Virus record (IMG/VR): IMGVR_UViG_3300046787_000200
Location: 288,013 to 352,012 of that record
Direction: 5' to 3' (one strand)
Length of the DNA: 64,000 bases
Within the stretch, counting starts at the first letter, position 1; every line of letters begins with the position of its first letter. The notes below the pieces were generated by a model. The model saw only the letters and a program-made list of their open reading frames with translations, did not search any database and had not been told where the DNA came from. Of this stretch, positions 15,911 to 34,307 are shown piece by piece. A program made the translations under genes and the position numbers.

Positions 15911-15915
15911 TTTAT

Positions 15916-15989
15916 TGGTGGAGGATGGGAGAATCGAACTCCCACGAAAACCTTGCAAAGGTCCCAGGCTCCCATTACATCAATCCCCC
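15916..15989 (-). tRNA. tRNA-Ala(TGC)
   Basis: G3:U70, loop TTTGCAA, CCA. Confidence 0.92.
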
Positions 15990-16534: not shown

Positions 16535-16577
16535 ACTCTTATTTATCACCGGCTATTCAACTGCTCTCCCAAAGCTT

Positions 16578-16662
16578 TGGTGCGGATGGTGAGACTCGAA
16601 CTCACACACCTTTCGGCGACGGCTTCTAAGACCGTTGCGGCTACCAATTACGCCACATCCGC
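16578..16662 (-). tRNA. tRNA-Leu(TAG)
   Basis: Loop CTTAGAA, long variable arm, CCA. Confidence 0.95.
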
Positions 16663-16669
16663 ATTAAAC

Positions 16670-16716
16670 TTTTAAAGAACAAGTAGTATTATAACAGAGA
16701 ACTATTTATCTGTCTA
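16670..16716 (-). promoter_or_regulatory. Sigma70 promoter TAGACA-17-TATAAT followed by boxA-like TTGTTCTTTAAAA
   Basis: Hexamers at 16711-16716 and 16688-16693; boxA at 16670-16682. Confidence 0.7.
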
Positions 16717-16732
16717 CAATATTTGGGTAATT

Positions 16733-16806
16733 TGGAGCGGGGTAAGAGAATCGAACTCTCCGCATCAGCTTGGAAGGCTGAGGTATTACCACTATACGAA
16801 CCCCGC
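16733..16806 (-). tRNA. tRNA-Gly(TCC)
   Basis: Loop CTTCCAA, CCA. Confidence 0.95.
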
Positions 16807-16814
16807 ATGTATTC

Positions 16815-16891
16815 TGGAGTAGGTGACAGGACTTGAACCTGCATAAGACGGATTTGCAATCCGTAGCCTGACCATTCAGCGACACACCTAC
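16815..16891 (-). tRNA. tRNA-Cys(GCA)
   Basis: Loop TTGCAAA, U73, CCA. Confidence 0.92.
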
Positions 16892-16897
16892 ATAAAA

Positions 16898-17005
16898 GCA
16901 TATATAAACACACCTTACCTAGCATTATCAGTGCAAGCCTTGCAGGAACCGGCTTATAGACTATCTAGGTTTCACAGATTCCACGATGGGTGTGTTTATA
17001 TATGC
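16898..17005 (-). repeat. Conserved inverted-repeat stem with variable cargo, copy 1
   Basis: GCATATATAAACACACC...GGTGTGTTTATATATGC, 17-bp perfect stem. Confidence 0.8.
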
Positions 17006-17220
17006 TCTGCATCCCCCGGCGGTAATTGTAGTAAATCTTTAACAAGCCACGTTCTCGCATGACTGAGAAACTAGCATCATTATGTTTACCTTCCACCCGC
17101 TTCCCGACAGGGACCGTTCTCGCATTGCTAGCGGCCTTTTGGTAAGAAGACTACCACCCTTAGTTATCACACTACTTCTCATCGTACGGGTCATACTATC
17201 TGTTGATTAGACAGAACGTT
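17006..17220 (-). ncRNA. Candidate ~210-nt structured RNA, possibly manA-like
   Basis: No ORF, GC-rich, long-range pairings ACCCG/CGGGT and CCCTGTCGG/CCGCCGGGG; class guessed only from size and tRNA context. Confidence 0.4.
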
Positions 17221-17221
17221 C

Positions 17222-17309
17222 TGGTGGAGAGTGTGGGATTCGAACCCACGCACCCATTGCTGAATGACAGATTAGCAATCTGTTGGTTTAACCACTCACC
17301 CAACTCTCC
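17222..17309 (-). tRNA. tRNA-Ser(GCT)
   Basis: Loop TTGCTAA, long variable arm, CCA. Confidence 0.95.
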
Positions 17310-17315
17310 AAATCT

Positions 17316-17400
17316 TATTATACTGAAACACACTACCAACCACCAAAGAGGGTGATTTCGTTTGAGTCAACAAAAAGAAATAATGTGTTTTAGTATAATG
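17316..17400 (-). repeat. Inverted-repeat stem with variable cargo, copy 2
   Basis: ATTATACTGAAACACACTA...TAATGTGTTTTAGTATAAT on the + strand. Confidence 0.8.
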
Positions 17401-18270
17401 GAGCACTGAGAATACATGCTTACCGAGTAACACCTCAGACATTATTGTAAACCTTGCGAGCCTACTTTCTTCTGATTTCCACTAAGCCCTGCTTTTACAC
17501 AGTAACCTAGTCTGTTACCAACATCGCCGTTTTAAGTCAGGCATTAGACTTGACATTGTATGCTATTCTACGCTTTCTACTCCGTTGACCTTTAGAGCCA
17601 TTCACTACCGCTAAGTAGTTACGAAACTTCCTGCATAAACTGTTTTCACCTTGCGAGTTACGACAGACTTGATTGTGTTGCCACTCAAGTATTAGATGCT
17701 TTTCACATACAACCGAGACAGACTTTGCATTTTTATAAGATAGTAGGAGTTGAACCTACAGCCTATTCCTTAAAAGGGAATCACTCTACCATTGAGTTAT
17801 ATCAACCTACTGTGATGTGCTGTCTCAGTTGCTTCATAATCTTTTGGACTACAAAATACAACACGCCACGTACCTTTTGTCTCGCGGACTACTCAGTCGT
17901 TTTTTGCGATTAATGTTGCCCCGCCGGTTTCCCGACAACACCATCAACCACTCAAACTGCATACGAACTCTTAGGTGCGACCCCTCGAATCAATACACTA
18001 CCCTTTCTCATACCAGTTAACTGGGCTGGTTTTGTTGTGAGGTCAGCACCACCTGTTACTCTCTGTCTGCCTGTCTTACCCTCACGGGAACATAAACAAA
18101 CATTCTTTCCACAACTCCCAGCGTCACTGTTATCACCACCCGTCTTATAGATGATGACTGCCTCACGGCAGTGAGCAGGCTTGCTTAGATGAACTATTAC
18201 TAGCGCGGGTCTGTAGGAGACGACCGCTTTGGGCATATCACTATGCTTATTCTAATGAGGCTAAGCCCCC
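17399..18270 (-). ncRNA. GOLLD-like giant ornate RNA (~870 nt) with an embedded tRNA-like domain
   Basis: No credible ORF; many GNRA-capped hairpins; 12-bp stem 17710-17721/17820-17831 encloses a tRNA-like unit; lies in a phage tRNA array. Confidence 0.6.
17736..17806 (-). pseudogene. tRNA-Lys(TTT)-like element inside the large ncRNA
   Basis: Intact D, anticodon (ATTCC-CTTTTAA-GGAAT) and T arms; only 4-bp acceptor stem and no CCA. Confidence 0.7.
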
Positions 18271-18274
18271 AAAA

Positions 18275-18390
18275 TTCTTATACAAATACACATTCACAGG
18301 AATCGAACCTGCCGACCTCGCTCTATACAGGGCGATGCTATATCCACTATATCAGCGTGTACGGCGCTTTTATGTGTATGTGTATAAGAA
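18275..18390 (-). repeat. Inverted-repeat stem, copy 3, whose cargo is a degenerate tRNA (GTA-centred loop)
   Basis: TTCTTATACAAATACACAT...ATGTGTATGTGTATAAGAA; internal T arm GCAGG-TTCGATT-CCTGT. Confidence 0.65.
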
Positions 18391-18400
18391 CTATACAAAA

Positions 18401-18477
18401 TGGTGCCTCGAACTGGACTCGAACCAGTAACCTAACGATTATGAGTCGTGTGCTCTAACCAATTGAGCTATCAAGGC
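18401..18477 (-). tRNA. tRNA-Ile2(CAT), lysidine type; Met not excluded
   Basis: CGA-CTCATAA-TCG anticodon arm as in ileX; CCA. Confidence 0.8.
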
Positions 18478-18481
18478 AATT

Positions 18482-18567
18482 TGGTGCGACTGGCCGGACT
18501 CGAACCGGCACGCTATTACGGCGAGAGATTTTAAGTCTCTTGTGGCTACCAATTACACCACAGTCGC
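18482..18567 (-). tRNA. tRNA-Leu(TAA)
   Basis: Loop CTTAAAA, long variable arm, CCA. Confidence 0.95.
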
Positions 18568-18586
18568 AAAAACTTTTTCAACTAAC

Positions 18587-18634
18587 TTTTTAAAGAACAA
18601 GTTGTATTATATATCAAAAACTATTTATTGTCAA
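18587..18634 (-). promoter_or_regulatory. Sigma70 promoter TTGACA-17-TATAAT plus boxA-like TTGTTCTTTAAAAA
   Basis: Hexamers at 18629-18634 and 18606-18611; boxA at 18587-18600. Confidence 0.85.
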
Positions 18635-18639
18635 ATGAA

Positions 18640-18851
18640 TTTGTAAGTAGTTCTCCCATAGTTATAAGAACCATTCACCCGTTTATACAAGACCGGTCGG
18701 GACTCGGTACGTCACTTGGGATACTAATCCAGTTAGCAACCAATCTGCACCGATCTTCCGATCGGTCGGGAGTTGAACCCGTCCCCTTCTACTATATCAG
18801 TTGTTCGAACAAACCTTTATAGCGTGACATTCTCTTGCTGACACTTACAAA
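18640..18851 (-). ncRNA. Candidate ~210-nt structured RNA with a T-loop module
   Basis: Closing stem TTTGTAAGT/ACTTACAAA; CGGG-TTCAACT-CCCG; ACCGATC-GGAA-GATCGGT. Confidence 0.5.
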
Positions 18852-18949
18852 ACTTTTTGTGTATAAGCATGACCAAACCTGCTACTTATACTTCAGACAC
18901 CTTACCTTGATGCGTGGCGTTGTGGTCAACCCATGTGTCTTACTAAACT

Positions 18950-19026
18950 TGGCGCACCGTAGGGGACTCGAACCCCTGGCCTCCACAGTGACAGTGTGGC
19001 GATCTAACCAACTGAGCTAACGGTGC
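18950..19026 (-). tRNA. tRNA-Asp(GTC)
   Basis: Loop CTGTCAC, G73, CCA. Confidence 0.95.
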
Positions 19027-19031
19027 AAAAA

Positions 19032-19256
19032 CTTTGATTGACTACTTACACTTTCGGCCGTCAATCAAGGCAATGAATTTCTGAGTCGCATTTGATTACA
19101 CGGCATATACGCCCGTCCGTGACGTTACGGTTGTTAATTTACCTGCAGGACGCATTAACAACTATCTTACATTTCTGCCGGGCGTGATTTACAAGGTTAT
19201 CCCCGACCCCCTTGACTGACCCTCTTGTCAGCGTGTGCCGCTTGTTACAGCAGTTC
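19032..19256 (-). ncRNA. Candidate multi-stem ncRNA
   Basis: CGGCA/TGCCG, ACGCCCG/CGGGCGT, GTTGTTAAT/ATTAACAAC, CAAGG/CCTTG and CTGAC/GTCAG stems. Confidence 0.5.
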
Positions 19257-19257
19257 T

Positions 19258-19342
19258 TGGTGGAGATGGTAAGATTCGAACCTACTCACCCGAAAGAATT
19301 GATTTACAGTCAACCGCGCCTCGCCGTCTGCGCCGCATCTCC
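19258..19342 (-). tRNA. tRNA-Tyr(GTA)
   Basis: Loop CTGTAAA, variable arm, CCA. Confidence 0.92.
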
Positions 19343-19348
19343 AAAAAC

Positions 19349-19424
19349 TATTCTGAAACACACTATCCTCTCTACCCATGTACCTTGGGACAGGCTTTTA
19401 CTGTGCGAAATGTGTTTTAGAATA
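19349..19424 (-). repeat. Inverted-repeat stem with variable cargo, copy 4
   Basis: TATTCTGAAACACACT...AATGTGTTTTAGAATA on the + strand. Confidence 0.8.
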
Positions 19425-19429
19425 ATACA

Positions 19430-19730
19430 GTAATACACGGCGTTAAACTGTCGGCCTATGCCCGCTTAACTTCTGTACTGTAACAGCTCTTTCCGCTAAC
19501 AACACTTTTCCTACCCCTACTGGACCGACTTTGCTTATCGTTCGTCACATTGGTCACGGTGCGCTTTCGCGGTGCGTGTATGTGAAGCCCGGGAAGTCTC
19601 TCCCGGGTCGGTTTCCATCTACTCATCTTACTAAGTGTTGTCTTAGTATCTTGACGCAATCGGAACAGTACTCCGATATCTACACTAAGGTACCCTAGTG
19701 TCGTTCTTATCTAGTATTGAACTATGCGAA
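19430..19730 (-). ncRNA. Candidate ~300-nt structured ncRNA
   Basis: Long-range ACAACACTT/AAGTGTTGT, CCGAC/GTCGG, CCCGGGA/TCCCGGG and CGC-GAAA-GCG; GC-rich. Confidence 0.5.
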
Positions 19731-19734
19731 TTTT

Positions 19735-19809
19735 TGGAAGAGCCACGGGGAATCGAACCCCGCTTCTCAGGATGAAAACCTGATGTCCTAACCGATAGAC
19801 GATGGCTCC
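19735..19809 (-). tRNA. tRNA-Glu(TTC), atypical loop TTTTCAT
   Basis: Cloverleaf, CCA. Confidence 0.85.
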
Positions 19810-19811
19810 AT

Positions 19812-20029
19812 CTATATGTAAACACACTATGGGAACTACACTTCTAATATAAGACCGTCTCTTATATTTTCAGTTTTGTCATTACTGCCTAACTACCCGT
19901 CACGTTCAACATTGCGCTACGCACTTTGTTCATACGCTTCTTGCACTCTATGAAACCCAGTTTCGTCCACTGGCTGATTTCAATAGAGTACCTAACGGAT
20001 CAGGTAACCTTTAATATGTTTGCATATAG
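19812..20029 (-). repeat. Inverted-repeat stem, copy 5, with ~180-nt structured cargo
   Basis: CTATATGTAAACACACT...AATATGTTTGCATATAG on the + strand. Confidence 0.7.
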
Positions 20030-20066
20030 TCTCCTGAACTTAACAGGAGCTATATGAAAAATTAAC

Positions 20067-20218
20067 TTTTTAAAGAACGTTGTTGATTTCTCAACTCATG
20101 CTATGATTGTAGCACAATTTTGATTTATTGTCAAATTCTTTTTTTGTATCTCTGTTTCCCAAGAACTTCTTCAATCAATCTAAGTATCTATTGTAGCACC
20201 AAGTTGATTTATTGTCAA
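20067..20218 (-). promoter_or_regulatory. rrn-like leader: tandem sigma70 promoters, boxB-like hairpin and boxA
   Basis: TTGACA-17-TACAAT at 20190-20218 and 20106-20134; GTTGA-GAAA-TCAAC at 20082-20095; GTTCTTTAAAAA at 20067-20078. Confidence 0.8.
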
Positions 20219-20238
20219 CCTATTCGATAAATAATCAA

Positions 20239-20831
20239 ATGATGATACCAATTAACTTGCCCAAACCATCAAACAGGACCATGGCATACATCAACTATTT
20301 CACGCAACAGAATTTACAAAAAAAATTGAATAATTCTAAAGAATGGTTCAACACTACTCAAAGACAAAAAATAAACTGTGCCTCAGGCTATTTAGTCCCT
20401 GACAAGATTATAACATCATTGTCACATGAGGAATATGTCATTTTTTTCCTGATGAAAATTTTGATATATCGATTGGTATATTACAAAATGTTTCTATCAA
20501 CGAACCGGTAGCCTTTGTTCCTCCACATATCGATCGGGGTAGAACCCTTGGCTTAATGTTTATTGTTGAAACAGGTGGTATTAACACAACTACTACATTT
20601 TATAAAACGCCACATGATGAATACACTCCGCAACAAACAGTTATGGTAGATTACAATGATTTAGAATCTGTATATTCGATTAAAACATTGAAGGATCAAT
20701 GGTACCTCATTGACGTTCAACAATTTCATAGTGTAGGAAATATTGAAACGCATCGTATATTATACAGTATAAATTTCTATGGAATTACTTATTCTAATTT
20801 CAAAGAAAAATATAAAAACTATATAATATAG
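20239..20831 (+). CDS. 2OG-Fe(II)/cupin-like protein split by a -1 frameshift at the T7 run 20441-20447
   Basis: The -1 frame reads FPDENF...PPHIDRGRTLGL into ORF 20556..20831 (QFHSV), completing HxD...H. Confidence 0.6.
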
Positions 20832-20833
20832 TT

Positions 20834-20908
20834 TGGTCCGGGGTGCAGGAATCGAACCCACATTCATCGGGTAGAAGCCGATTGTATTATCCATTATACT
20901 AACCCCAG
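20834..20908 (-). tRNA. tRNA-Arg(TCT)
   Basis: Loop CTTCTAC, CCA. Confidence 0.9.
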
Positions 20909-20929
20909 ATAAATTTCTAACTTGCCTCT

Positions 20930-20958
20930 ATTATAGTGTATTGTTGATTTATTGTCAA
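20930..20958 (-). promoter_or_regulatory. Sigma70 promoter TTGACA-17-TATAAT
   Basis: Perfect consensus. Confidence 0.85.
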
Positions 20959-20970
20959 CAATTATTTTAT

Positions 20971-21046
20971 TGGCTCCCCTACGTGGGCTCGAACCACGGA
21001 CATTTTGATTAACAGTCAAACGCTCTACCGACTGAGCTATAGGAGA
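20971..21046 (-). tRNA. tRNA-Asn(GTT)
   Basis: Loop CTGTTAA, G73, CCA. Confidence 0.95.
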
Positions 21047-21053
21047 ATAAATT

Positions 21054-21133
21054 TGGGGCAGGGTTCAAACCTACCGCATTACATACCTTTATCGTTGTAA
21101 CTCTGCACTATGTTATAGCCATTGTGTGCCTGC
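21054..21133 (-). ncRNA. Degenerate tRNA-like unit ending in CCA
   Basis: T-arm GGTAGG-TTTGAAC-CCTGCC directly followed by CCA; no canonical anticodon loop. Confidence 0.4.
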
Positions 21134-21140
21134 ATTTTCT

Positions 21141-21215
21141 TGGTGCCCCAGGTTAGAATCGAACTAACTACCTATCGCTTACAAGGCGAGTGCTCTACCA
21201 GTGAGCTACAAGGGC
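21141..21215 (-). tRNA. tRNA-Thr(TGT)
   Basis: Loop CTTGTAA, CCA. Confidence 0.95.
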
Positions 21216-21235
21216 TTTGTCTTTTATTTAACTGA

Positions 21236-21264
21236 AGTATATCACAACAAAACTTTTTTGTCAA
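21236..21264 (-). promoter_or_regulatory. Sigma70 promoter TTGACA-17-TATACT
   Basis: Near consensus with extended -10 TG. Confidence 0.8.
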
Positions 21265-21283
21265 GCCTCATTGTGATATCTTT

Positions 21284-21844
21284 CTAGCTTAGGAGAATTC
21301 TACTATGCTTGGGAACACCTGCTAACAAATATTCCATTTGATCTGCAAGAATAGTTCTATGTTGTAAAATCATATTTTCATAATGATTCGGTACATACGG
21401 TGCGTACAGCAATTCCATACGTGCTTCTTTCAAAGTCTTGTGACCCTTCTTACTGTTACATTCTTTGCAAGCAGTAACTACGTTCATCCAGGTGTTTTCA
21501 CCACCTTTACTCTTTGGATGAATGTGGTCACGACTTAAGTTATTGTAATTCGCAAAGTGCTCACCGCAATATGCACATACATGCCTATCACGACCAAACA
21601 ATGTTCTGTTGGTAAGTGCAACACATGAATGTTTATATGGATTGAATCCGTGACCTTTAATAGCGATAATGCTAGAAGTTTCTAAGTAACTTTCGCTACC
21701 GTCATTCTGTACACCACCACGATATCTAGCCACAACTTCACCCATTGACCATGCGATGGCATCTTTGGCTTTGTAGGTAATTGCGTCATCATATGAGATC
21801 CATTGTCTTGGAACTCCCGAGATATCTAGTGCTAGAACAGCCAT
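21284..21844 (-). CDS. HNH endonuclease (McrA-like)
   Basis: RD..CAYCG...SRDHI.PKSKGG..W.NVVTAC..CN..K. Confidence 0.9.
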   Translation of the reverse strand: MAVLALDISGVPRQWISYDDAITYKAKDAIAWSMGEVVARYRGGVQNDGSESYLETSSIIAIKGHGFNPYKHSCVALTNRTLFGRDRHVCAYCGEHFANYNNLSRDHIHPKSKGGENTWMNVVTACKECNSKKGHKTLKEARMELLYAPYVPNHYENMILQHRTILADQMEYLLAGVPKHSRILLS

Positions 21845-21893
21845 GGTGTACTCCTTTTCTTGCTATTGTCACTAATTGTATTTAATGTCCTAT

Positions 21894-21968
21894 TGGCGGG
21901 TCCTGCAGGAATTGAACCCACATCCCGAAGTTCGAAGCATCGTATTCTATCCATTGAACTAAGGACCC
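21894..21968 (-). tRNA. tRNA-Arg(TCG)
   Basis: Loop CTTCGAA, A20-type D loop, CCA. Confidence 0.85.
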
Positions 21969-22948
21969 ATGTTTCTATTATACACCTTTACGATTTCTTG
22001 TAAAGTTTTGTTCTTCCATTCTATATTTGGCATATCAGCCATTATTTCTTTAACAGTCAATGCTTGCAATAATGGATGAGAACATAAGTATTCATTTAGT
22101 ACTTTTGTATGTCTAAATTTAAAAATTTCATCTTTAAATTTTAAATTTGATTGAGCACCCGCATATGTAGGATGATAACTCTTTGCAAAACTAAAATCAA
22201 ATTCCCCTAAATTGGATTCTTGTGTAATTTTTTCTAGCACATCAAAAATATCATTATCATATATTTTCATTAAATCCAGTGAGTAGAAATATTTAGGTAT
22301 TTCATGTGGGGTGACATAGTGTTCACTATTTACTTCATGCGGATTATGTTCGTTACGTAAATTAAACCAGTGGGCATAATTATTACGTAATGGTGTTAAA
22401 TTAAAAGTTTCTGTTTGTGTTTCTAACCCAAATGATATAGGAAAAATAGTATCATAATGTTCAATAAACTTATCACGTGTTACTATATCGTTAGGTGGAT
22501 TAAAAAAATCTATATTGTATATTTCATTAAACTTTTTAGCATGGAAATACAACGGCCATTTAGTAATGGCATTTAAATTGCCTATACATCTAGTATAATG
22601 ATTATCTGCAGTGATATGAATGATTACTGGATCTCTATCCATATTCATAATTGTATCAATAGAAGTTATAATACTACCTCTATCCCAACCATTCACTAAA
22701 AATATTTTCTTTTCTTTCGGTTGATTTAGTATCAACCAATACATTATTTCTCGTATAGTAGAATGTGTTGGTATTCTATAATGCAAATGACTTGTACCTG
22801 TACCACCGTATTTCTTATTATCAGAAACATTTAACGGATCATCTACTGTTGTAGTAGATAAATTATTTTCACTCTTACTTAAACACCAGCTTAAGTAACT
22901 ACCTGAATATCCCGGTGGGTATATCAAGTAAACATTTTTATTCAACAT
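21959..22948 (-). CDS. Sulfotransferase-like P-loop protein
   Basis: IYPPGYSGSYL; stop lies inside the 5' end of tRNA-Arg. Confidence 0.55.
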   Translation of the reverse strand: MLNKNVYLIYPPGYSGSYLSWCLSKSENNLSTTTVDDPLNVSDNKKYGGTGTSHLHYRIPTHSTIREIMYWLILNQPKEKKIFLVNGWDRGSIITSIDTIMNMDRDPVIIHITADNHYTRCIGNLNAITKWPLYFHAKKFNEIYNIDFFNPPNDIVTRDKFIEHYDTIFPISFGLETQTETFNLTPLRNNYAHWFNLRNEHNPHEVNSEHYVTPHEIPKYFYSLDLMKIYDNDIFDVLEKITQESNLGEFDFSFAKSYHPTYAGAQSNLKFKDEIFKFRHTKVLNEYLCSHPLLQALTVKEIMADMPNIEWKNKTLQEIVKVYNRNMGP

Positions 22949-23210
22949 TGTCTATAATTTCAATATTAGGAGAAGTAATTCCTAAATTAGCAGTTTCTGT
23001 TAATATAAATTGCTTAAATTCTTCTGCCGCGGCTTGATCTAACCAATACCGTTTAGTTGTAACATCATCTATTACATCATATAAACCATTGGTCTTGTCG
23101 GTTGCTACTGCATTAGATATAAAATCCATTCTATCTTCATTCAAACTATCATGTCCAACTTGTGATTCTAGCGAGTCCCATTTAATTATTGTGGCTTTAG
23201 TCCAAACCAT
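22938..23210 (-). CDS. Small protein of a paralogous family (RYWLDQAAAEEF)
   Basis: Similar to 24878..25180; AGGAG SD. Confidence 0.7.
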   Translation of the reverse strand: MVWTKATIIKWDSLESQVGHDSLNEDRMDFISNAVATDKTNGLYDVIDDVTTKRYWLDQAAAEEFKQFILTETANLGITSPNIEIIDNVE

Positions 23211-23262
23211 ATATTTCTCCTATGCAAACATATTTAGTTACAGTGGTTCAACGATAATTATT

Positions 23263-23338
23263 TGGTGCCAACGAATGGGATCGAACCATTGACGCACAGA
23301 TTTTCAGTCTGTCGCTCTACCATCTGAGCTACATCGGC
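23263..23338 (-). tRNA. tRNA-Phe(GAA)
   Basis: Loop CTGAAAA, CCA. Confidence 0.95.
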
Positions 23339-23959
23339 TTATTTTTTATAGAAAATACTATTATGAACTTTTGAAATAACCATTTCAAATCCCAAGTCAA
23401 GTAATCTATCTCGTAATACATTAGGTACAGCTTCTATAATAAACAATTTACATTTAGTAAGTTTGTTTAAATCAACGTCATTGAATAGCATTTTAAGAAA
23501 TTCTGATTCTGGTTTTGCCTCAACATCTATACTAATTGCATCAACATCCCAACCTACATAATCTAATAACGTGTTAACTGTAGTTGTATTGGTAATGATA
23601 GGGTATTGTCTATCTGTTTGTTTATAGTAATATTGTTGGCTCATCCATGATGGATCAAAACTTGAAGAACCTCCTGTATCTACTGACAGATAAAAATCTG
23701 ATAGTCCACTAGTAGGTGCTACTGCACCGTTAAAGATTTTAACCTTATCTCCATATGACATGACATTGTTAAGCAATCTAGTACATGACATTGGATTAGG
23801 TTCGCAGTAAACACCGTTCCATCCTTTTTCTAGTAGCCCCCAAAATGGCTCGTCATCAGAGTTTGGGCCGCCGTCACATGCACCTATTTCTAGGAATTTT
23901 CCAGTGGGTTGATTCTTAAAAAAATCAATTACAAATTGTTTTTCAATTATGTCGTTCAT
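23339..23959 (-). CDS. FkbM family methyltransferase (likely start MNDIIEK)
   Basis: FLEIGACDG, GWNGVYCEPNP, SIDVE; the longer track ORF runs through three tRNA genes. Confidence 0.85.
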   Translation of the reverse strand: MNDIIEKQFVIDFFKNQPTGKFLEIGACDGGPNSDDEPFWGLLEKGWNGVYCEPNPMSCTRLLNNVMSYGDKVKIFNGAVAPTSGLSDFYLSVDTGGSSSFDPSWMSQQYYYKQTDRQYPIITNTTTVNTLLDYVGWDVDAISIDVEAKPESEFLKMLFNDVDLNKLTKCKLFIIEAVPNVLRDRLLDLGFEMVISKVHNSIFYKK

Positions 23960-24000
23960 TATAATATTTAATAACATTAAAGTGTTATATAAATTATTTA

Positions 24001-24075
24001 TGGTGGATGATGCAAGGATCGAACTTGCGGCCTTCTCAATGTCACTGAGATATTCTACCTCTGAAATAATCATCC
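24001..24075 (-). tRNA. tRNA-Val(GAC), atypical loop GTGACAT
   Basis: Cloverleaf, CCA. Confidence 0.85.
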
Positions 24076-24081
24076 TAAAAT

Positions 24082-24160
24082 TGGTCTGGATGGGAGGATT
24101 CGAACCTCCAGCCTCCGACTTCCAAGGCCGGCCGTCTACGCAGATTGACAATACACCCAG
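24082..24160 (-). tRNA. tRNA-Pro(TGG), second divergent copy
   Basis: Loop CTTGGAA, C1:G72, A73, CCA; unusual D arm. Confidence 0.8.
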
Positions 24161-24167
24161 ATATGTT

Positions 24168-24242
24168 TGGTGGAGACCGAGGGAGTTGAACCCTTCTAGA
24201 CAAGAATCTTGCAAGGATTCCCCGTAGCCCGCTACTGTCCCC
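24168..24242 (-). tRNA. tRNA-Ala(TGC)-like, second copy with minimal D arm
   Basis: G3:U70, GAATC-CTTGCAA-GATTC, CCA. Confidence 0.7.
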
Positions 24243-24245
24243 AAT

Positions 24246-24620
24246 TTATCTTACTGCTTTCGCCCTTGCTTCTACCATCTCGTCAATGAAACATTTATCA
24301 ATGACGTTTGTATAGGTATCTGTATAGCTACTTGCGTGATCCACGACCCTATTGTCTGGTTCGTGGTATGTTCTAATTCTTTCAGAGCCTGCTAAGTTAC
24401 GCTCTTTATCTTTATGAAAATGTGCTTGTATACGACTTAAACAGGTTGTATATGCCGCTCGTTTATTATCTTCTCGGCTACGACTATTCGTACCGTTAGC
24501 TTGAATGCCTGTTGGCTCATGTATGCATCTGCAACAGTTTTGATGTTTGTTACGATGTTGTCCACCTTTGCCGGTGCCACTGAACCATTCATAGCGAAAT
24601 TGATCTTCTGTAATTTTCAT
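24246..24620 (-). CDS. GGQ peptide-chain-release-factor-like peptidyl-tRNA hydrolase (RF-1 domain only)
   Basis: SGTGKGGQHRNK...HEPTGI...RS...NK...ERIRTY..PDNRVVDH; lacks stop-codon recognition domain. Confidence 0.85.
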   Translation of the reverse strand: MKITEDQFRYEWFSGTGKGGQHRNKHQNCCRCIHEPTGIQANGTNSRSREDNKRAAYTTCLSRIQAHFHKDKERNLAGSERIRTYHEPDNRVVDHASSYTDTYTNVIDKCFIDEMVEARAKAVR

Positions 24621-24637
24621 ATGTGCCTTAAAAATAC

Positions 24638-24713
24638 TGGAGCCCCTAGATGGAGTCGAACCATCGACTTCTCTATACCAAAGAGATATTTTACCGTTGC
24701 AAACTATGGGGGC
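24638..24713 (-). tRNA. tRNA-Thr(GGT)
   Basis: Loop TTGGTAT, CCA. Confidence 0.88.
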
Positions 24714-24877
24714 AAAGGAGGGAGCCTAACTATCTGTCGTTACACAGCCTTGTTAGATTGTCTCGAACACAAGAGTTTAAGCTACCTATGCAATCATACT
24801 ATAGTGTCACACACCAGCGCAGTGTGCTAGATTACTCGGGACTCATCGTGCCGTCTATCCCAAAAAAGTGAAGAAGA

Positions 24878-25180
24878 TTAACTAGCGTCAGTAATTTGTA
24901 TATTTACTATGCTAACACCTGCTGCCGGAGACAGAATAGTATTTAAATATGTTTCCCATTCTTCCGCGGCAGCTTGATCCGACCAATAACGTTCTGTTAC
25001 ATAAGTTGGATTTGTTGACAGTTCATGCAATATACCGTCTGTTTTTCCTTCTGTAACCATAGCATTGATCTTTACTTTAGAATCAATTATTGGTTGTTCT
25101 CTTAAATTAATATTACTAGCAGTTTGAAATATAGTAGCGTAGGTTGCCCATTCGCATACAAGTTTTTTTGTTAAACTCAT
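24878..25180 (-). CDS. Small protein of a paralogous family (RYWSDQAAAEEW)
   Basis: Similar to 22938..23210; upstream ATAAATA and AGGA. Confidence 0.7.
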   Translation of the reverse strand: MSLTKKLVCEWATYATIFQTASNINLREQPIIDSKVKINAMVTEGKTDGILHELSTNPTYVTERYWSDQAAAEEWETYLNTILSPAAGVSIVNIQITDAS

Positions 25181-25213
25181 TTTTTAGTCCTAAACATATA
25201 TTTATCTAGTTTT

Positions 25214-25291
25214 TGGCAGAGGGTACTGGATTCGAACCAGTGATCATGGAGTCAAAGTCCAATGCTTTAGGCCAAACTAAGCTAACCCCCA
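25214..25291 (-). tRNA. tRNA-Gln(TTG)
   Basis: Loop CTTTGAC, G73, CCA. Confidence 0.9.
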
Positions 25292-25300
25292 ACAAAATTT

Positions 25301-25376
25301 TGGCATCCTGTACGGGAATCGAACCCGTCTCTACAACTTGAAAGGCTGTTGATCTAAACCGATAATCTAACAGGAT
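25301..25376 (-). tRNA. tRNA-Glu(TTC), second copy
   Basis: Loop CTTTCAA, G73, CCA. Confidence 0.9.
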
Positions 25377-25450
25377 ATAAATTTGGCGCCGATTTTTGTC
25401 ATTTTAACTCAGGCTAACGTACACTCCCTGAGATTAGTTGCAACACAACT

Positions 25451-25527
25451 TGGTAGCCTCACTGTGACTCGAACACAGGACCCCCGCCTTATCAAGACGG
25501 TGCTCTAACCAACTGAGCTATGAGGCT
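25451..25527 (-). tRNA. tRNA-Ile(GAT)
   Basis: Loop TTGATAA, CCA. Confidence 0.95.
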
Positions 25528-25539
25528 ATAAATACTACT

Positions 25540-25704
25540 ATGAAAACCTACAAGAATCTTACTCCTAGTGGTTTACATTTTCATTTGTCTTTAAGTGATG
25601 AAGGTGTATGTTGTATCATAGTCTATGATATCTTTGATTGTGAATCACAACTTCATTACTTCACTGATATCAATAAAGCATTGCGCTTTATCAACAATTT
25701 ATAA
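25540..25704 (+). CDS. 54-aa protein oriented against the tRNA array (MKTYKNLTPSGLHFHL...)
   Basis: TATAAATA 5 nt upstream of ATG; fills the inter-tRNA gap. Confidence 0.55.
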   Translation: MKTYKNLTPSGLHFHLSLSDEGVCCIIVYDIFDCESQLHYFTDINKALRFINNL

Positions 25705-25706
25705 TT

Positions 25707-25781
25707 TGGTGGATGTAAGTAGATTTGAACTACTGACCTGCTCCGTATGAAGGAGATGCACTACCGCTGTGCTATACATCC
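25707..25781 (-). tRNA. tRNA-Met(CAT), elongator-like
   Basis: Loop TTCATAC, paired 1:72, A73, CCA. Confidence 0.85.
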
Positions 25782-25784
25782 ATT

Positions 25785-25858
25785 TGGTGCCCCTTGACAG
25801 AATTGAACTGCCGTATCCTGATTACAAAACAGGCGTAATACCGTTATACGAAAAGGGC
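25785..25858 (-). tRNA. tRNA-Thr(TGT), second copy
   Basis: Loop TTTGTAA, CCA. Confidence 0.88.
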
Positions 25859-25865
25859 GATATCT

Positions 25866-25942
25866 TGGGGTGCTTGATGGGATTCGAACCCACGCATATC
25901 GGAATCACAATCCGAGGTCTTGACCGCTTGACGACAAGCACC
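25866..25942 (-). tRNA. tRNA-His(GTG)
   Basis: G-1:C73, loop TTGTGAT, CCA. Confidence 0.93.
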
Positions 25943-25948
25943 ATATGT

Positions 25949-26040
25949 TGGAGGAAGATGTGAGATTCGAACTCACGGAACCATTTCTGATCCGTCTGAT
26001 TTCAAGTCAGGTGCATTAAACCGGGCTCTGCCAATCTTCC
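25949..26040 (-). tRNA. tRNA-Ser(TGA)
   Basis: Loop CTTGAAA, long variable arm, CCA. Confidence 0.93.
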
Positions 26041-26041
26041 G

Positions 26042-26227
26042 TTATACTTTTTTGTCTATATGATTGTTATGATGTGTAGGCTCTAACTCTCCTACTCTGT
26101 TATATAGATACTGAACAACTTCAATAACTTTCTTATTAGTTGCAGGATCTACTAACATACTGTAAACCGTGTTGCGATATTGGTGATTAACCATATCGTT
26201 TACTGAGGTTACACTTTGAACTATCAT
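26042..26227 (-). CDS. Hypothetical protein
   Basis: TAAATA just upstream of ATG. Confidence 0.5.
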   Translation of the reverse strand: MIVQSVTSVNDMVNHQYRNTVYSMLVDPATNKKVIEVVQYLYNRVGELEPTHHNNHIDKKV

Positions 26228-26240
26228 ATAGTATTTAACA

Positions 26241-26324
26241 TACCATATAGAAACACACTAGCGATTGGTTGATCTCCAACCTTTACCCACGCTTCTCACC
26301 TGACTAATGTGTTTTTATATGATA
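26241..26324 (-). repeat. Inverted-repeat stem with variable cargo, copy 6
   Basis: TACCATATAGAAACACACTAG...CTAATGTGTTTTTATATGATA on the + strand. Confidence 0.85.
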
Positions 26325-26461
26325 TTGAGGGTGGGTAACGATCCCACTAACTATCGGTGCGATGCCGATTGTGCTACGCTCCATATACAATTAGTTTACT
26401 CTGTTTCGAACCAGACCAACTGTATATCTTTGCACTAACTTTCCATGTCGTTTTCCTCTTT

Positions 26462-26589
26462 ACCATATAAAAACATTTTCAATACTCAACGCAATGCTGG
26501 CACAATGTTCTTTCGCCCCTGCCAGGGAACCGAACAGAGCACCGAAAATTTGTGGCCGATGATGCCCGTCAAAAATGTTTTTATATGGT
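26462..26589 (-). repeat. Inverted-repeat stem with variable cargo, copy 7
   Basis: ACCATATAAAAACATTTT...AAAATGTTTTTATATGGT. Confidence 0.8.
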
Positions 26590-26650
26590 GGCTCCTTACT
26601 TCGATACGAGCGAATCGTGTCGGTCTGGTGGAGTTAACCACGGAGTTAAA

Positions 26651-26734
26651 CTACCATATAGAAACACACTCCCGGAGACGCATTACCTCCCCGTACCGTA
26701 GTATTATGAATTCAAGTGTGTTTTTATATGGTAG
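26651..26734 (-). repeat. Inverted-repeat stem, copy 8, sharing the CCA end of tRNA-Lys
   Basis: CTACCATATAGAAACACACT...AGTGTGTTTTTATATGGTAG. Confidence 0.85.
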
Positions 26735-26805
26735 AAGCACAGGGACTTGAACCCTGAACCTACCGGTTAAAAGCCGGTTGCTCTAGCCAGTTGAGCTATA
26801 CTTCC
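26729..26805 (-). tRNA. tRNA-Lys(TTT)
   Basis: Loop CTTTTAA, CCA. Confidence 0.95.
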
Positions 26806-26812
26806 ATAATTA

Positions 26813-26887
26813 TGGTCCCTCCACTCAGAATTGAACTGAGTCTTGTCGGATTAAGAGTCCGCTATGCTACCGTAACATCTTAGAGGG
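26813..26887 (-). tRNA. tRNA-Lys(CTT)
   Basis: Loop CTCTTAA, CCA. Confidence 0.85.
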
Positions 26888-26952
26888 ATGACTGTATTAA
26901 ATTGTCTTTAATGTGCCATCCCTAGACCATACTTGGAAGTCTAAGAATGACA

Positions 26953-26976
26953 CTATCGTTTACCTGAACGTTTCAT
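26953..26976 (-). CDS. Mini leader peptide MKRSGKR
   Basis: Strong AAGGAG SD, own sigma70 promoter, 14-bp hairpin starting right after TAG. Confidence 0.6.
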   Translation of the reverse strand: MKRSGKR

Positions 26977-26998
26977 GTCGTTCTCCTTTAAAAAATGA

Positions 26999-27027
26999 AG
27001 TATACTAGACAACTGAATTATTGTCAA
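26999..27027 (-). promoter_or_regulatory. Sigma70 promoter TTGACA-17-TATACT
   Basis: Near consensus. Confidence 0.8.
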
Positions 27028-27031
27028 ATAT

Positions 27032-27108
27032 TGGTGCGACCTAAGAGAGTCGAACTCCTGACCCCCAAGTTCGTAGCCTGGTGCTCTATCCATCTGAGCT
27101 AAGGTCGC
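27032..27108 (-). tRNA. tRNA-Arg(ACG)
   Basis: Loop CTACGAA, CCA. Confidence 0.95.
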
Positions 27109-27121
27109 ATATAAATACAGA

Positions 27122-27658
27122 ATGAATCCATTCTGCGTTAATTTAAATTTAGATATACCCCCTTTAAGACCTGATATAGATATCAATAACTTTTCTAAAG
27201 ATTATTGGAATACTATTCCTTTATCATATATCAATACAAATTTAATCTCTTTTCTATTACAAAAAGGATTAGATTTGCCTAAAGCGGCTACTTTCTATTC
27301 TGAAGGTGAATGCATTCATCCTATACATATTGATGGCATAGCAGAATCTGATATGGTTAAAATCAATTGGGTATACGGTGATAACCATATGATGAATTGG
27401 TATTCATCTAATATAATTAAGCCATATAGTCTTGAAAAAAATGATAGAACATATGTCTATTATAAACCACATGAAGTTAATCTAGTGCATTCTCAACAAG
27501 TAGGATGTCCTAGTATAGTTCAAACAGGAATACCGCATAACGTAGTAAATTACTACGGAACACGTAGATGTATATCTATTGCATTGTCACATCGCCAATC
27601 TAAAAAGCTTGTAACAATGGATGAAGCATTGCATTTGTTTAATGAGATTACGGCTTAA
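27122..27658 (+). CDS. 2OG-Fe(II)/cupin-like protein
   Basis: IHIDG...INW...PSIV..G.PHNV.N...R..ISI; TATAAATA at 27110-27117. Confidence 0.65.
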   Translation: MNPFCVNLNLDIPPLRPDIDINNFSKDYWNTIPLSYINTNLISFLLQKGLDLPKAATFYSEGECIHPIHIDGIAESDMVKINWVYGDNHMMNWYSSNIIKPYSLEKNDRTYVYYKPHEVNLVHSQQVGCPSIVQTGIPHNVVNYYGTRRCISIALSHRQSKKLVTMDEALHLFNEITA

Positions 27659-27694
27659 CCCGTCAGAAGGGTCAGTGTGCTGTTCATCCGTAAA

Positions 27695-27757
27695 GCATTC
27701 TAAAACATACTAGATGCGGCATTTCAGCCCATATCAACTTAGTATGTTTTAGAATGC
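27695..27757 (-). repeat. Inverted-repeat stem with variable cargo, copy 9
   Basis: GCATTCTAAAACATACTA...TAGTATGTTTTAGAATGC, 18-bp perfect stem. Confidence 0.8.
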
Positions 27758-28047
27758 CGTGTATTGCTACACGACATGTTAGGGTCGATACCCTAACCAG
27801 TGATTTTAGTCTCTGCGTTATCGCCACAGATTTCATCCTACTGTCCGCCCATTCTATACATTTTGCGCTGTATCACGGCTCTCGTTGCCTATTCACGCTA
27901 TCTATCAATCTTCAAGTAAGTACTTGTCTTTCTCTCTTAACTGATAGATTTTAGCACGGTCAATCTTATTTTGTATCAACTGTGCTAGTTGCTCCTTTGT
28001 CAGAACATGAGTGCTAAACCAATCATGTTTTGCTTCAGAAGTTTTGT

Positions 28048-28076
28048 ATTCTATCTCTTTATCCATTTATTGTCAA
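28048..28076 (-). promoter_or_regulatory. Sigma70 promoter TTGACA-17-TAGAAT
   Basis: Near consensus with TTGACAATAAAT signature. Confidence 0.75.
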
Positions 28077-34295: not shown

Positions 34296-34307
34296 AACGT
34301 TATTTAG

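What the first reader, a model, noticed from the sequence alone, without database searches (positions are those of the whole stretch)
16898..27757. Dispersed family of conserved inverted-repeat stems, each holding a different cargo, confined to the tRNA array
Seen: at least nine elements (16898-17005, 17316-17400, 18275-18390, 19349-19424, 19812-20029, 26241-26324, 26462-26589, 26651-26734, 27695-27757; a possible arm-swapped copy at 15642-15710). On the transcribed strand they read roughly CATATAAAAACACAYT-[cargo]-AGTGTGTTTCTATATG. The 15-20-bp arms covary between copies (TATATA, TATACT, TTCT outer segments), four copies keep an A.C mismatch at the same position, and the cargos are unrelated: about 30, four of about 43-47, about 75, 80, 90 and 180 nt, one being a degenerate tRNA. 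I saw none outside the array. Inference: a standardised processing stem (RNase III-like or a phage nuclease) that releases a library of small RNAs from the polycistronic tRNA transcript, which could act as antisense regulators, decoys for defence nucleases, or CRISPR/antitoxin mimics. The arms are inverted, not direct, so this is not a CRISPR array.
Basis: partly seen in the sequence, partly recalled or inferred. Interest (0 to 1): 0.82.

Follow-up and report, generated by a model that had tools for sequence, protein, structure and literature searches.

The report
Standard-stem hairpin RNA cassettes in phage tRNA arrays
A large uncultivated freshwater phage, and well over a hundred related viral contigs, carry between their tRNA genes a so far undescribed family of hairpin RNAs that share one conserved 18-base-pair stem but hold very different inner parts, which look like exchangeable small-RNA cassettes cut out by ordinary tRNA processing.

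Summary
Nine hairpins share one stem inside the minus-strand tRNA and non-coding RNA island (16.9-27.8 kb) of a 352-kb IMG/VR phage contig. A covariance model finds none elsewhere in the window.

- **Spread:** the family is phage-specific. There are no hits in GenBank phages, and one 1.5-kb contig among 185,579 species genomes. No Rfam family matches it.
- **Stem:** on the tRNA-sense strand it reads CCAUAUA-A-AAACACA-U...G-UGUGUUU-C-UAUAUGG. The outer pairs covary. An A.C mismatch sits at pair 8 and a U.G at pair 16.
- **Position:** the stem starts with the CCA of the upstream tRNA (117 of 121 abutting cases). It usually ends at the first bases of the next tRNA, following G-1 in tRNA-His. In nine contigs the same hairpin is the excised intervening segment of a permuted tmRNA gene.
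- **Cargo:** 134 families occur among 199 elements. Cargos turn over at one junction, and the same cargo recurs at different junctions in divergent phages. One cargo family shows compensatory changes.

Best reading: excisable small-RNA cassettes with a common stem, released by tRNA end-processing. RNase III involvement and any antisense or decoy role are untested.

The parts
16897..17006 (-). Element 1. It has an 18-bp perfect stem (AGCAUAUAUAAACACACC / GGUGUGUUUAUAUAUGCU) and a 74-nt cargo. It follows non-coding RNA 'ncD' (17010-17220) and lies 5 nt upstream of tRNA-Cys.
   Evidence: model R1 E = 1e-7
17316..17400 (-). Element 2. Its stem carries the A.C mismatch and its cargo is about 47 nt. 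It starts 3 nt after the 3' end of the GOLLD RNA and ends 6 nt before tRNA-Ser.
   Evidence: R1 56.4 bits on minus against 44.5 on plus
18275..18390 (-). Element 3. It has a variant stem (CAUACACAU / AUGUGUAUUUG) and an 80-nt cargo with T-arm and D-like arm, which is a degenerate tRNA body. It sits between tRNA-Met and the GOLLD 5' domain.
   Evidence: R1 E = 0.013; not called as tRNA
19347..19426 (-). Element 4. Its stem carries the A.C mismatch and its cargo is 44 nt. It sits between non-coding RNA 'ncA' (19430-19730) and tRNA-Tyr.
   Evidence: R1 52.7 bits on minus against 32.2 on plus
19811..20030 (-). Element 5. It has a variant stem (CUAUAUGCAAACAUAUU / AGUGUGUUUACAUAUAG) and a 184-nt branched cargo. 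It is the first RNA after the promoters at 20218 and 20134, and ends 2 nt before tRNA-Glu.
   Evidence: a 180-nt identical contig of the cargo occurs in an RNA run (table 8, record 24)
26241..26324 (-). Element 6. It has the canonical stem with A.C and a 48-nt cargo.
   Evidence: R1 60.4 bits on minus against 42.6 on plus
26462..26589 (-). Element 7. It has an 18-bp perfect stem (ACCAUAUAAAAACAUUUU) and a 92-nt cargo.
   Evidence: R1 E = 3e-7
26651..26734 (-). Element 8. It has a 20-bp stem with A.C, and its 5' arm contains the CUACCA 3' end of tRNA-Lys(UUU) (26729-26805). Its 44-nt cargo is conserved at 96-98% in three other contigs at different tRNA junctions.
   Evidence: R1 62.4 bits
27695..27757 (-). 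Element 9. It has an 18-bp perfect stem (GCAUUCUAAAACAUACUA) and a 27-nt cargo. It starts 3 nt after conserved non-coding RNA 'ncF' (27760-27945).
17403..18270 (-). GOLLD RNA. The Rfam match covers 17403-17869, and the variable 5' domain reaches about 18270. It is bracketed by elements 3 and 2.
   Evidence: 206 bits; 5' domain conserved in 8 loci; summed depth 1e4-1e5 in metatranscriptome contigs
16688..28076 (-). Set of near-consensus sigma-70 promoters on the minus strand that drive the island. First hexamers start at 28076, 27027, 22004, 21264, 20958, 20218, 20134, 18634 and 16716.

Best explanation
The elements are RNA-level modules. Each is a 63-230-nt hairpin RNA encoded in the same sense as the tRNAs and co-transcribed with them from strong sigma-70-type promoters.

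The common part is an A/U-rich closing stem of about 18 bp. It has an A.C mismatch at pair 8 and a U.G at pair 16. It begins with, or directly after, the 3' CCA of the upstream stable RNA (tRNA, tmRNA acceptor piece, GOLLD or 'ncF'). Where a tRNA follows, it ends at position -1/+1 of that tRNA.

The whole spacer is therefore the hairpin. RNase P cleavage at the downstream tRNA would make its 3' end. A cut just after CCA would make its 5' end (RNase BN/Z, E, III or a phage enzyme; not determined). The product would be a closed hairpin with a 1-nt 3' overhang.

The stem is the common handle, serving stability, processing and possibly a shared binding protein, and it also gives homology for recombination. 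The apical 'cargo' is the specific part: a small structured RNA whose function is unknown. Cassettes are swapped among phages. This explains one junction holding many different cargos and one cargo appearing at many junctions.

Shown:
- The family exists, and its stem and orientation are conserved.
- The geometry of the junctions with neighbouring RNAs.
- It is specific to phages.
- Cargo is highly diverse and turns over.
- Cargo structure is conserved in one family.
- The hairpin is used as the tmRNA intervening segment.

Inferred:
- The hairpin is excised.
- Which enzymes act on it.
- That the cargo does anything.
For: Transcription sense:
- All nine elements lie downstream of consensus minus-strand promoters, in tRNA orientation.
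- The model scores 8-20 bits higher on the tRNA strand for the four asymmetric copies.
- Across 199 non-redundant relatives, pair 8 is A.C on the tRNA strand in 114 cases, and G.U in at most 3.

Junctions:
- In 117 of 121 elements that abut an upstream tRNA, the CCA lies inside the stem.
- Of 61 that abut a downstream tRNA, 43 overlap it by 2 nt. A further 9, mostly tRNA-His, overlap by 1 nt, as expected if the register follows G-1.
- In nine contigs the hairpin lies between ...CCACCA and GGGG... of permuted tmRNA genes, which is the intervening segment removed on maturation (PMC11915505).

Stem: 93.9% of cells pair and 9 of 18 pairs changed on both sides.

Not needed for tRNA processing as such: 405 of 867 inter-tRNA gaps are under 10 nt and hold no hairpin.

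Cargo:
- There are 134 families among 199 elements.
- The Lys-to-Met junction holds 16 cargo families in 20 elements, and 0, 1 or 2 cassettes.
- Elements are 93-97% identical between loci whose tRNAs are only 70-86% identical.
- In the 'GUCUUGCAAGC' cargo family, internal helices are 97% paired and 6 of 10 pairs changed on both sides.
- Cargo is 50% G+C and slightly more stable than shuffles, more so in sense than in antisense.

RNA presence: RNA libraries cover the element bins at depths like those of tRNA bins. Neighbouring reading-frame and intergenic bins read zero.
Against: - No discrete processed hairpin RNA has been seen. The only expression data are assembler contigs without ends or strand, summed over relatives.
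- The cut after CCA is hypothetical. A stable 18-bp stem directly after CCA would block 3' exonucleases.
- Cargo covariation was shown for one family only, and that family was enlarged with a pattern that fixed its single-stranded motif.
- The mean cargo folding z-score is only -0.5.
- In the window, four elements sit 2-6 nt from the next tRNA rather than abutting it, and five of the nine cargos have no relative among about 200 sampled loci.
- No partner protein was identified.
Confidence: 0.45

Rival explanations
1. Pure processing or insulating spacers. Only the stem matters, for example as an RNase III-type site or a fold that separates and stabilises neighbouring RNAs, like the T7 early RNase III hairpins or the rRNA operon stems. 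The cargo is tolerated filler, partly decayed tRNA bodies.
For: - The stem is far more conserved than the cargo.
- Within cargo families, differences fall mostly in the cargo.
- 10 of 114 cargos contain sense T-arm remnants.
- The stem is 18-20 bp, long enough for RNase III.
- Hairpins directly follow the GOLLD 3' end in 4 of 8 loci and 'ncF' in 9 of 13, which fits a 3' cap or processing role.
- The hairpin serves as the tmRNA intervening segment.
Against: - Most tRNA junctions need no hairpin: 405 of 867 gaps are under 10 nt.
- A tetraloop would do for processing, yet cargos are 27-184 nt, G+C-rich and, in one family, kept by compensatory changes.
- The stem sequence, not only its pairing, is conserved.
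- The neighbours' mature ends are staggered by 1 nt, not the 2 nt of RNase III products.
Confidence: 0.22
2. Selfish palindromic DNA elements of MITE or REPIN type. They spread between phage genomes and survive at sites where they do no harm, because tRNA processing throws the spacer away.
For: - The same element occurs at non-syntenic junctions with higher identity than the flanking tRNAs.
- One junction holds 0, 1 or 2 copies.
- Variants lacking elements appear among the metatranscriptome contig joints (table 5).
- HNH endonuclease genes sit in the arrays, in the window at 21284-21844 and in 10 loci.
Against: - Orientation is fixed relative to transcription: A.C on the sense strand in 114 cases, G.U in at most 3.
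- The ends coincide with RNA ends to the nucleotide and follow G-1 of tRNA-His.
- Interiors are unrelated between copies, with 134 families in 199 elements, unlike MITEs or REPINs, whose copies share their interior.
- No transposase or RAYT gene was seen among the window reading frames I scanned.
- No target-site duplication is evident.
Confidence: 0.13
3. Y-RNA-like ribonucleoprotein scaffolds. The conserved mismatched stem would be the docking site of one phage or host protein, as Ro/Rsr binds the Y RNA stem. The cargo would be the effector module, sometimes tRNA-like as in YrlA.
For: - The long closing stem carries a conserved non-Watson-Crick pair.
- A minority of cargos are tRNA-like, with the T-arm stacked next to the 3' arm (element 3).
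- Several different modules sit on the same stem within one genome.
Against: - The Rfam YrlA model does not match the elements. Its only hit is 23.8 bits, on true tRNAs.
- No TROVE or other RNA-binding protein was found among the scanned window reading frames.
- No protein family is universal in the arrays.
- About 90% of cargos are not tRNA-like.
Confidence: 0.1
4. DNA-level recombination sites of attC type. Folded single-stranded hairpins with a strand-marking mismatch would be used by a recombinase to shuffle cassettes.
For: - The arms are imperfect inverted repeats with a variable centre and a conserved asymmetric mismatch.
- Cassette-like turnover is seen.
Against: - No integrase or recombinase was seen in the window or among the common array proteins.
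- The attC core (RYYYAAC / GTTRRRY) is not matched, by inspection.
- The variable part lies inside the hairpin, not between sites.
- The exact match to RNA ends has no explanation at the DNA level.
Confidence: 0.04

Closest known systems
Intervening segment of permuted (two-piece) tmRNA genes, and inter-tRNA spacers removed by tRNA-processing enzymes
   Same: The position is identical: between a mature CCA 3' end and the next mature 5' end. In nine related contigs the hairpin literally is the tmRNA intervening segment. PMC11915505 states that permuted transcripts are cleaved by tRNA-processing enzymes and that intervening segments can hold a tRNA or a repeat.
   Different: The Rfam consensus of cellular intervening segments is only a short A/U-rich loop. 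Here a conserved 18-bp stem with a 27-184-nt structured insert is reused at many tRNA junctions and after GOLLD.
RNase III processing hairpins of phage T7 early transcripts and rRNA operon stems (from general knowledge)
   Same: A dispersed family of similar hairpins lies between cistrons of phage polycistronic RNA. The stems are long enough for RNase III, and a hairpin may remain as a 3' cap on the upstream RNA.
   Different: The T7 sites have an internal loop and no cargo, and they are not tied to CCA or +1 positions. Here the neighbours' mature ends are 1 nt apart across the stem rather than 2, and the enzyme is unknown.
Functional RNAs from tRNA operon spacers (E. coli 3'ETS-leuZ sponge; mitochondrial tRNA punctuation; from general knowledge)
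   Same: An RNA lying between tRNAs is released by tRNA end-processing and can act in its own right.
   Different: Those are single, species-specific spacers. This is a modular family with one standard stem, hundreds of different inserts and exchange between phages.
REP / BIME / REPIN palindromic elements
   Same: Short imperfect palindromes are dispersed outside genes, form RNA hairpins and vary in copy number.
   Different: REPIN copies share their interior, occur in both orientations in bacterial chromosomes and depend on RAYT transposases. Here interiors are unrelated, orientation is fixed and the family is absent from cellular genomes.
Bacterial Y RNAs (YrlA)
   Same: A modular RNA with a long closing stem bearing a conserved irregularity. 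Some members have a tRNA-like module, and several copies can sit in a row.
   Different: There is no match to the Rfam model and no Ro/Rsr gene in view. Most cargos are not tRNA-like.
Integron attC sites
   Same: Imperfect inverted repeats with a variable centre, an asymmetric mismatch and cassette turnover.
   Different: There is no integrase and the attC core consensus is not matched. The cargo lies inside the hairpin, and the boundaries are set by RNA ends.

Membership tests
RNase III substrate hairpins | Double-stranded stem of about 20 bp or more | tested here: met
   Stems are 18-20 bp. 18 pairs are conserved across 56 relatives.
RNase III substrate hairpins | Staggered cuts that leave 2-nt 3' overhangs | tested here: inconclusive
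   No ends have been mapped. The mature ends of the flanking tRNAs are offset by 1 nt across the stem: A76 pairs with U-1. Those ends therefore cannot both be direct RNase III products. Cuts higher in the stem remain possible.
RNase III substrate hairpins | Processing depends on RNase III | not testable with these tools
   This needs rnc mutants or in vitro cleavage.
Intervening segment of permuted tmRNA | Lies between the CCA of the acceptor piece and the 5' end of the coding piece of a gene matched by RF04321 / RF01849 / RF01850 | tested here: met
   Met in nine related loci: L014, L016, L050, L049, L103, L105, L102, L109, L118. The window itself holds no tmRNA gene.
Bacterial Y RNA (YrlA, RF02553) | Match to the Rfam covariance model | tested here: not met
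   The only hit is 23.8 bits (gathering score 69), at 18426-18537 on true tRNAs. Nothing matches on the elements.
Bacterial Y RNA (YrlA, RF02553) | Neighbouring Ro/Rsr (TROVE) gene | tested here: not met
   No TROVE domain was found in the window reading frames scanned with Pfam. The frames at 947-3224 and from 48.5 kb onwards were not scanned.
CRISPR array | Direct repeats separated by spacers | tested here: not met
   The arms are inverted. Each pair closes one hairpin.
REP / REPIN | Copies share arms and interior, and occur in both orientations | tested here: not met
   There are 134 cargo families among 199 elements. A.C lies on the sense strand in 114 cases, and the opposite orientation occurs in at most 3.
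REP / REPIN | Resident in bacterial chromosomes with a RAYT transposase | tested here: not met
   One hit on a 1.5-kb contig among 185,579 species genomes. No transposase was found in the scanned reading frames.
Integron attC | R''/R' core RYYYAAC / GTTRRRY and a linked IntI integrase | tested here: not met
   The stem logo does not fit the core. No integrase was found.
tRNA (element 3 cargo) | Called by ARAGORN or by the Rfam tRNA model | tested here: not met
   Not listed. A T-arm and a D-like arm are visible in the sequence.
Spacer-derived small RNA of tRNA operons | Encoded in a transcribed spacer of a tRNA operon, in sense | tested here: met
Spacer-derived small RNA of tRNA operons | Accumulates as a discrete RNA and acts on a partner | not testable with these tools
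   Only contig-level metatranscriptome depth is available.

The most novel reading that the evidence does not exclude
The hairpins are an 'RNA cassette array'. One standard stem, bound by a dedicated phage or host factor, displays a hypervariable library of small structured RNAs, such as decoys, aptamers or tRNA mimics aimed at host defence or translation factors. The library is exchanged horizontally by recombination in the conserved arms and docked at tRNA 3' ends, above all tRNA-Lys. In effect this would be an RNA counterpart of integron cassettes in phage tRNA islands.
Probability: 0.25. Interest if true: 0.9.

Novelty: new variant of a known kind. Interest (0 to 1): 0.68.

Why it matters
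Phage tRNA islands are usually read as lists of tRNAs with junk between them. Here the 'junk' is organised. A conserved, phage-only hairpin scaffold sits to the nucleotide between mature RNA ends, is reused in tmRNA precursors and after GOLLD, and carries hundreds of different structured inserts that move between phages.

If the inserts are functional, this is a large untapped class of phage small RNAs with a built-in release mechanism. It also offers a natural design for expressing arbitrary small RNAs from tRNA arrays.

If the inserts are not functional, the stem is still a new processing or stability signal. It must be dealt with by the tRNA 3'-end machinery, which makes the order and enzymes of tRNA maturation in these hosts testable.

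It also gives GOLLD and several other very abundant unnamed RNAs a defined genomic grammar.

Tried and rejected
1. RNase III signature. I first computed a 2-nt stagger between the flanking mature ends. Checking against an ARAGORN drawing showed an off-by-one error. The true offset is 1 nt, so that argument was dropped.
2. Known RNA families. Rfam at gathering and at E <= 1 gives nothing on the elements. YrlA is rejected.
3. Cultured relatives. There is no similar DNA in 50,697 GenBank phage records.
4. Cellular origin. One tiny contig matched among 185,579 species genomes.
5. Antisense targets. The longest complementarity of each window cargo to the window is 10-13 nt, no better than shuffles.
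6. Partner protein.
   - I clustered 2,208 reading frames from 105 loci. The commonest array proteins are a calcineurin-like phosphoesterase (Metallophos, 20 loci), a PF04308 RNase H-like protein (14), a dual-specificity phosphatase, an RNA polymerase omega-like protein, a cytidine/TadA-like deaminase (13 each) and HNH (10). None is universal.
   - The window frames I scanned show no RNase III, TROVE, reverse transcriptase, integrase or transposase.
7. Expression. Reads could be laid only as Logan contigs. Depth is summed over relatives and has no ends or strand, so it cannot show processed hairpins.
8. The 'arm-swapped' copy at 15642-15710 has no model hit and no partner arm.
9. Cargo inversion. 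The cargo orientation is the same in L058 and L077 relative to the tRNAs, which rules out an invertible DNA switch (with tRNA strands).
10. A generic long-stem scan of the window was too permissive to be useful.

Full report
**What the window is.** The 64-kb window is part of IMG/VR contig IMGVR_UViG_3300046787_000200 (352 kb). It has about 35% G+C. GenBank phages hold nothing close: only a tRNA-Glu matches. ARAGORN finds 34 tRNA genes, all on the minus strand, between 12.4 and 27.1 kb. Rfam finds a GOLLD RNA at 17403-17869 on the minus strand (206 bits), with an embedded tRNA-like segment. Near-consensus sigma-70 promoters lie on the minus strand at 28076, 27027, 20218, 20134, 18634 and 16716, among others. 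The whole island is therefore read in the tRNA sense.

- On the minus strand each folds as a long closing stem with a hairpin or branched top.
- I built covariance model R1 from 56 relatives in other contigs and ran it over the whole window without filters.
  - It recovers seven elements at E = 2e-14 to 3e-7 and element 3 at E = 0.013.
  - Element 5 has a 184-nt cargo and escapes the model.
  - The only other hit below 0.01 is a plain hairpin at 48953-49006.
  - The proposed arm-swapped copy at 15642-15710 is not a member.
- The four asymmetric copies score 8-20 bits better on the tRNA strand.

**The family is large and phage-specific.**
- In 185,579 species genomes the strict pattern hits one 1.5-kb contig of a freshwater MAG.
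- GenBank phages give nothing. Rfam gives nothing even at E <= 1.
- The fetched loci are tRNA arrays: the first 121 loci held 1,187 tRNAs, spread over 84 of them.
- After removing duplicates there are 199 elements in 133 tRNA-bearing loci.

**Anatomy of the stem.** On the tRNA-sense strand the stem reads 5'-CCAUAUA-A-AAACACA-U...(G/A)-UGUGUUU-C-UAUAUGG-3'.
- Pairs 1-7 covary with almost no mismatches.
- Pair 8 is A.C in 114 of 199 elements and A-U in 50.
- Pair 16 is U.G in 121. Pair 17 is U-A.
- On the 56-sequence alignment, 93.9% of cells pair, against 30-58% when the partner column is slid. Nine of 18 pairs changed on both sides.
- Pairs 9-15 were fixed by the search patterns, so their invariance is not evidence. 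In the window they do vary, with compensation (ACAUUU, ACAUAC, ACAUAU in elements 7, 9 and 5).
- The mismatch is always on the sense strand. This argues for an RNA-level role, as does the constant cargo orientation.

**Junction geometry.**
- Of 121 elements that abut an upstream tRNA, 117 start with its CCA.
- Of 61 that abut a downstream tRNA, 43 overlap its first two bases and 9 overlap one base.
- An ARAGORN drawing of one case gives this register:
  - C74 pairs with G+2, C75 with G+1, and A76 with U-1.
  - The spacer itself is a fully paired hairpin with a 1-nt 3' overhang.
- For tRNA-His the program's start is one base later in 6 of 7 cases. This is expected if the extra G-1 occupies the same stem position.
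- My first count of a 2-nt stagger was an off-by-one error and is withdrawn.
- In the window only element 8 shows the CCA overlap, with tRNA-Lys(UUU). Elements 1, 2, 4 and 5 end 2-6 nt before the next tRNA.

**The tmRNA link.**
- In nine contigs the same AAACACAC/GUGUGUUU hairpin, with cargo, lies between ...CCACCA and GGGG... of genes matched by the Rfam permuted tmRNA models. Both alpha and beta types occur.
- That is the intervening segment absent from mature two-piece tmRNA, which tRNA-processing enzymes remove (PMC11915505).
- The hairpin also directly follows the GOLLD 3' end in 4 of 8 other loci and a conserved RNA I call 'ncF' in 9 of 13. Both arrangements also occur in the window.
- The module therefore sits wherever a stable RNA's 3' end meets the next RNA.

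**Not a requirement of tRNA processing.** Inter-tRNA gaps are bimodal. 405 of 867 are under 10 nt with no hairpin. Of 114 gaps of 60-100 nt, 44 are this family. Other families of long-stem spacers anchored on CCA exist in the same arrays.

**Cargo.**
- The 199 elements hold 134 cargo families.
- The tRNA-Lys to tRNA-Met junction alone has 20 elements with 16 cargo families, and 0, 1 or 2 cassettes.
- Conversely, 13 of 38 multi-member families sit behind different tRNAs.
- Whole elements are 93-97% identical between loci whose tRNAs are 70-86% identical and not syntenic. This implies exchange between phages.
- Cargos are 50% G+C and slightly more stable than shuffles: z = -0.53 in sense against -0.25 in antisense.
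- Ten of 114 contain a sense T-arm, usually next to the 3' arm.
- In the 14-member 'GUCUUGCAAGC' family the internal helices are 97% paired, and 6 of 10 pairs changed on both sides.
- Window cargos have no antisense match in the window beyond chance.
- Element 8's cargo recurs at 96-98% identity in three other contigs. Five of the nine window cargos have no relative in the sample.

**Expression.**
- Freshwater metatranscriptomes hold the region, but only as assembler contigs.
- Summed depth is 1e4-1e5 on GOLLD and other long G+C-rich spacers.
- Depth is 1-400 on bins holding elements or tRNAs, and zero on neighbouring reading-frame and intergenic bins.
- This shows RNA presence, not processing.

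**Interpretation.**
- The best-supported reading (0.45) is that these are excisable small-RNA cassettes with a standard stem. They would be released by RNase P on the 3' side and by an undetermined cut after CCA on the 5' side, and exchanged through their conserved arms.
- The rivals are:
  - pure processing or 3'-cap spacers with filler cargo (0.22);
  - selfish palindromic DNA at harmless sites (0.13);
  - a Y-RNA-like ribonucleoprotein scaffold (0.10);
  - attC-like recombination sites (0.04).
- No partner enzyme was found.
- I found no description of this hairpin in the paper library searched.

Noticed in passing
window 17403-18270 (-): A GOLLD RNA (Rfam 206 bits over 17403-17869) with an embedded tRNA-like segment at 17739-17803. 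Its variable 5' domain reaches about 18270. It lies downstream of tRNA-Met and is bracketed by elements 3 and 2. Summed depth in freshwater metatranscriptome contigs is 1e4-1e5.
   Followed up: partly
window 18640-18945, 17010-17220, 27760-27945, 15700-15912, 19430-19730, 26325-26461 (all -): Several unnamed G+C-rich spacers are conserved RNA-like families with no Rfam match. The first recurs in 43 sampled loci, the second in 25, the third in 14 and the fourth in 7. Bins 18652-18848 and 17076-17272 reach depths of 2e4-1e5 and 6e3-2e4 in RNA libraries.
   Followed up: partly
L014:13913-14302, L016:1926-2306, L050:352-749, L049:9117-9423, L103:12312-12662, L105:2481-2807, L102:1-261, L109:3769-4155, L118:7508-7945: Viral contigs encode permuted (two-piece) tmRNA genes of both alpha and beta type. 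Their intervening segment is the same hairpin with a 45-75-nt cargo. One cargo (L050) contains a T-arm.
   Followed up: partly
L114, L099, L061, L076 (gaps of about 127 nt); L004, L032, L045, L077, L092, L112 and others (gaps of about 72 nt): Other spacer families occur in the same arrays. One has a second long stem anchored on CCA (CCAUUUGUUUUGCUGAUGUAAGC...GCAAAACAAAUGG, with covarying arms). Another is an element of about 72 nt reading AGGAUAGC...GCUAUCCUGUUUUAU.
   Followed up: no
window 24246-24620 (-), 21284-21844 (-), 11813-12376 (-), 13903-14550 (-): Proteins are embedded in or beside the tRNA array. They are an RF-1-domain protein (ArfB / peptidyl-tRNA hydrolase-like), a free-standing HNH endonuclease, a calcineurin-like phosphoesterase shared with 20 other arrays, and a methyltransferase.
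   Followed up: partly
window 5944-6816 and 8865-9839 (-); 33588-36779 (-): Two TctC/Bug-type periplasmic receptor genes are present. To my knowledge this family is greatly expanded in Betaproteobacteria, so they hint at such a host. Auxiliary genes are also present: AhpC, CMD, a fatty-acid desaturase and an Asp/Asn hydroxylase.
   Followed up: no
window 48953-49006: A plain 19-bp hairpin (AUAUUCAUACACACUUACU / AGUAAGUGUGUAUGAAAAU, 10-nt loop) lies between two large minus-strand genes. It weakly resembles the family stem (R1 E about 0.006).
   Followed up: no
window 18585-18598, 20065-20078, and a near copy at about 16669-16683: A conserved box ACTTTTTAAAGAAC (plus strand) lies just downstream of three of the consensus minus-strand promoters. 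Two exact copies occur against 0.02 expected. It is a possible leader hairpin or operator.
   Followed up: partly
window 15500-21400 (joints): Metatranscriptome and metagenome contigs of relatives join tRNA-Met (18401) directly to tRNA-Ser (17309), skipping element 3, GOLLD and element 2. Others skip element 5. The blocks are therefore present or absent as units among strains.
   Followed up: no
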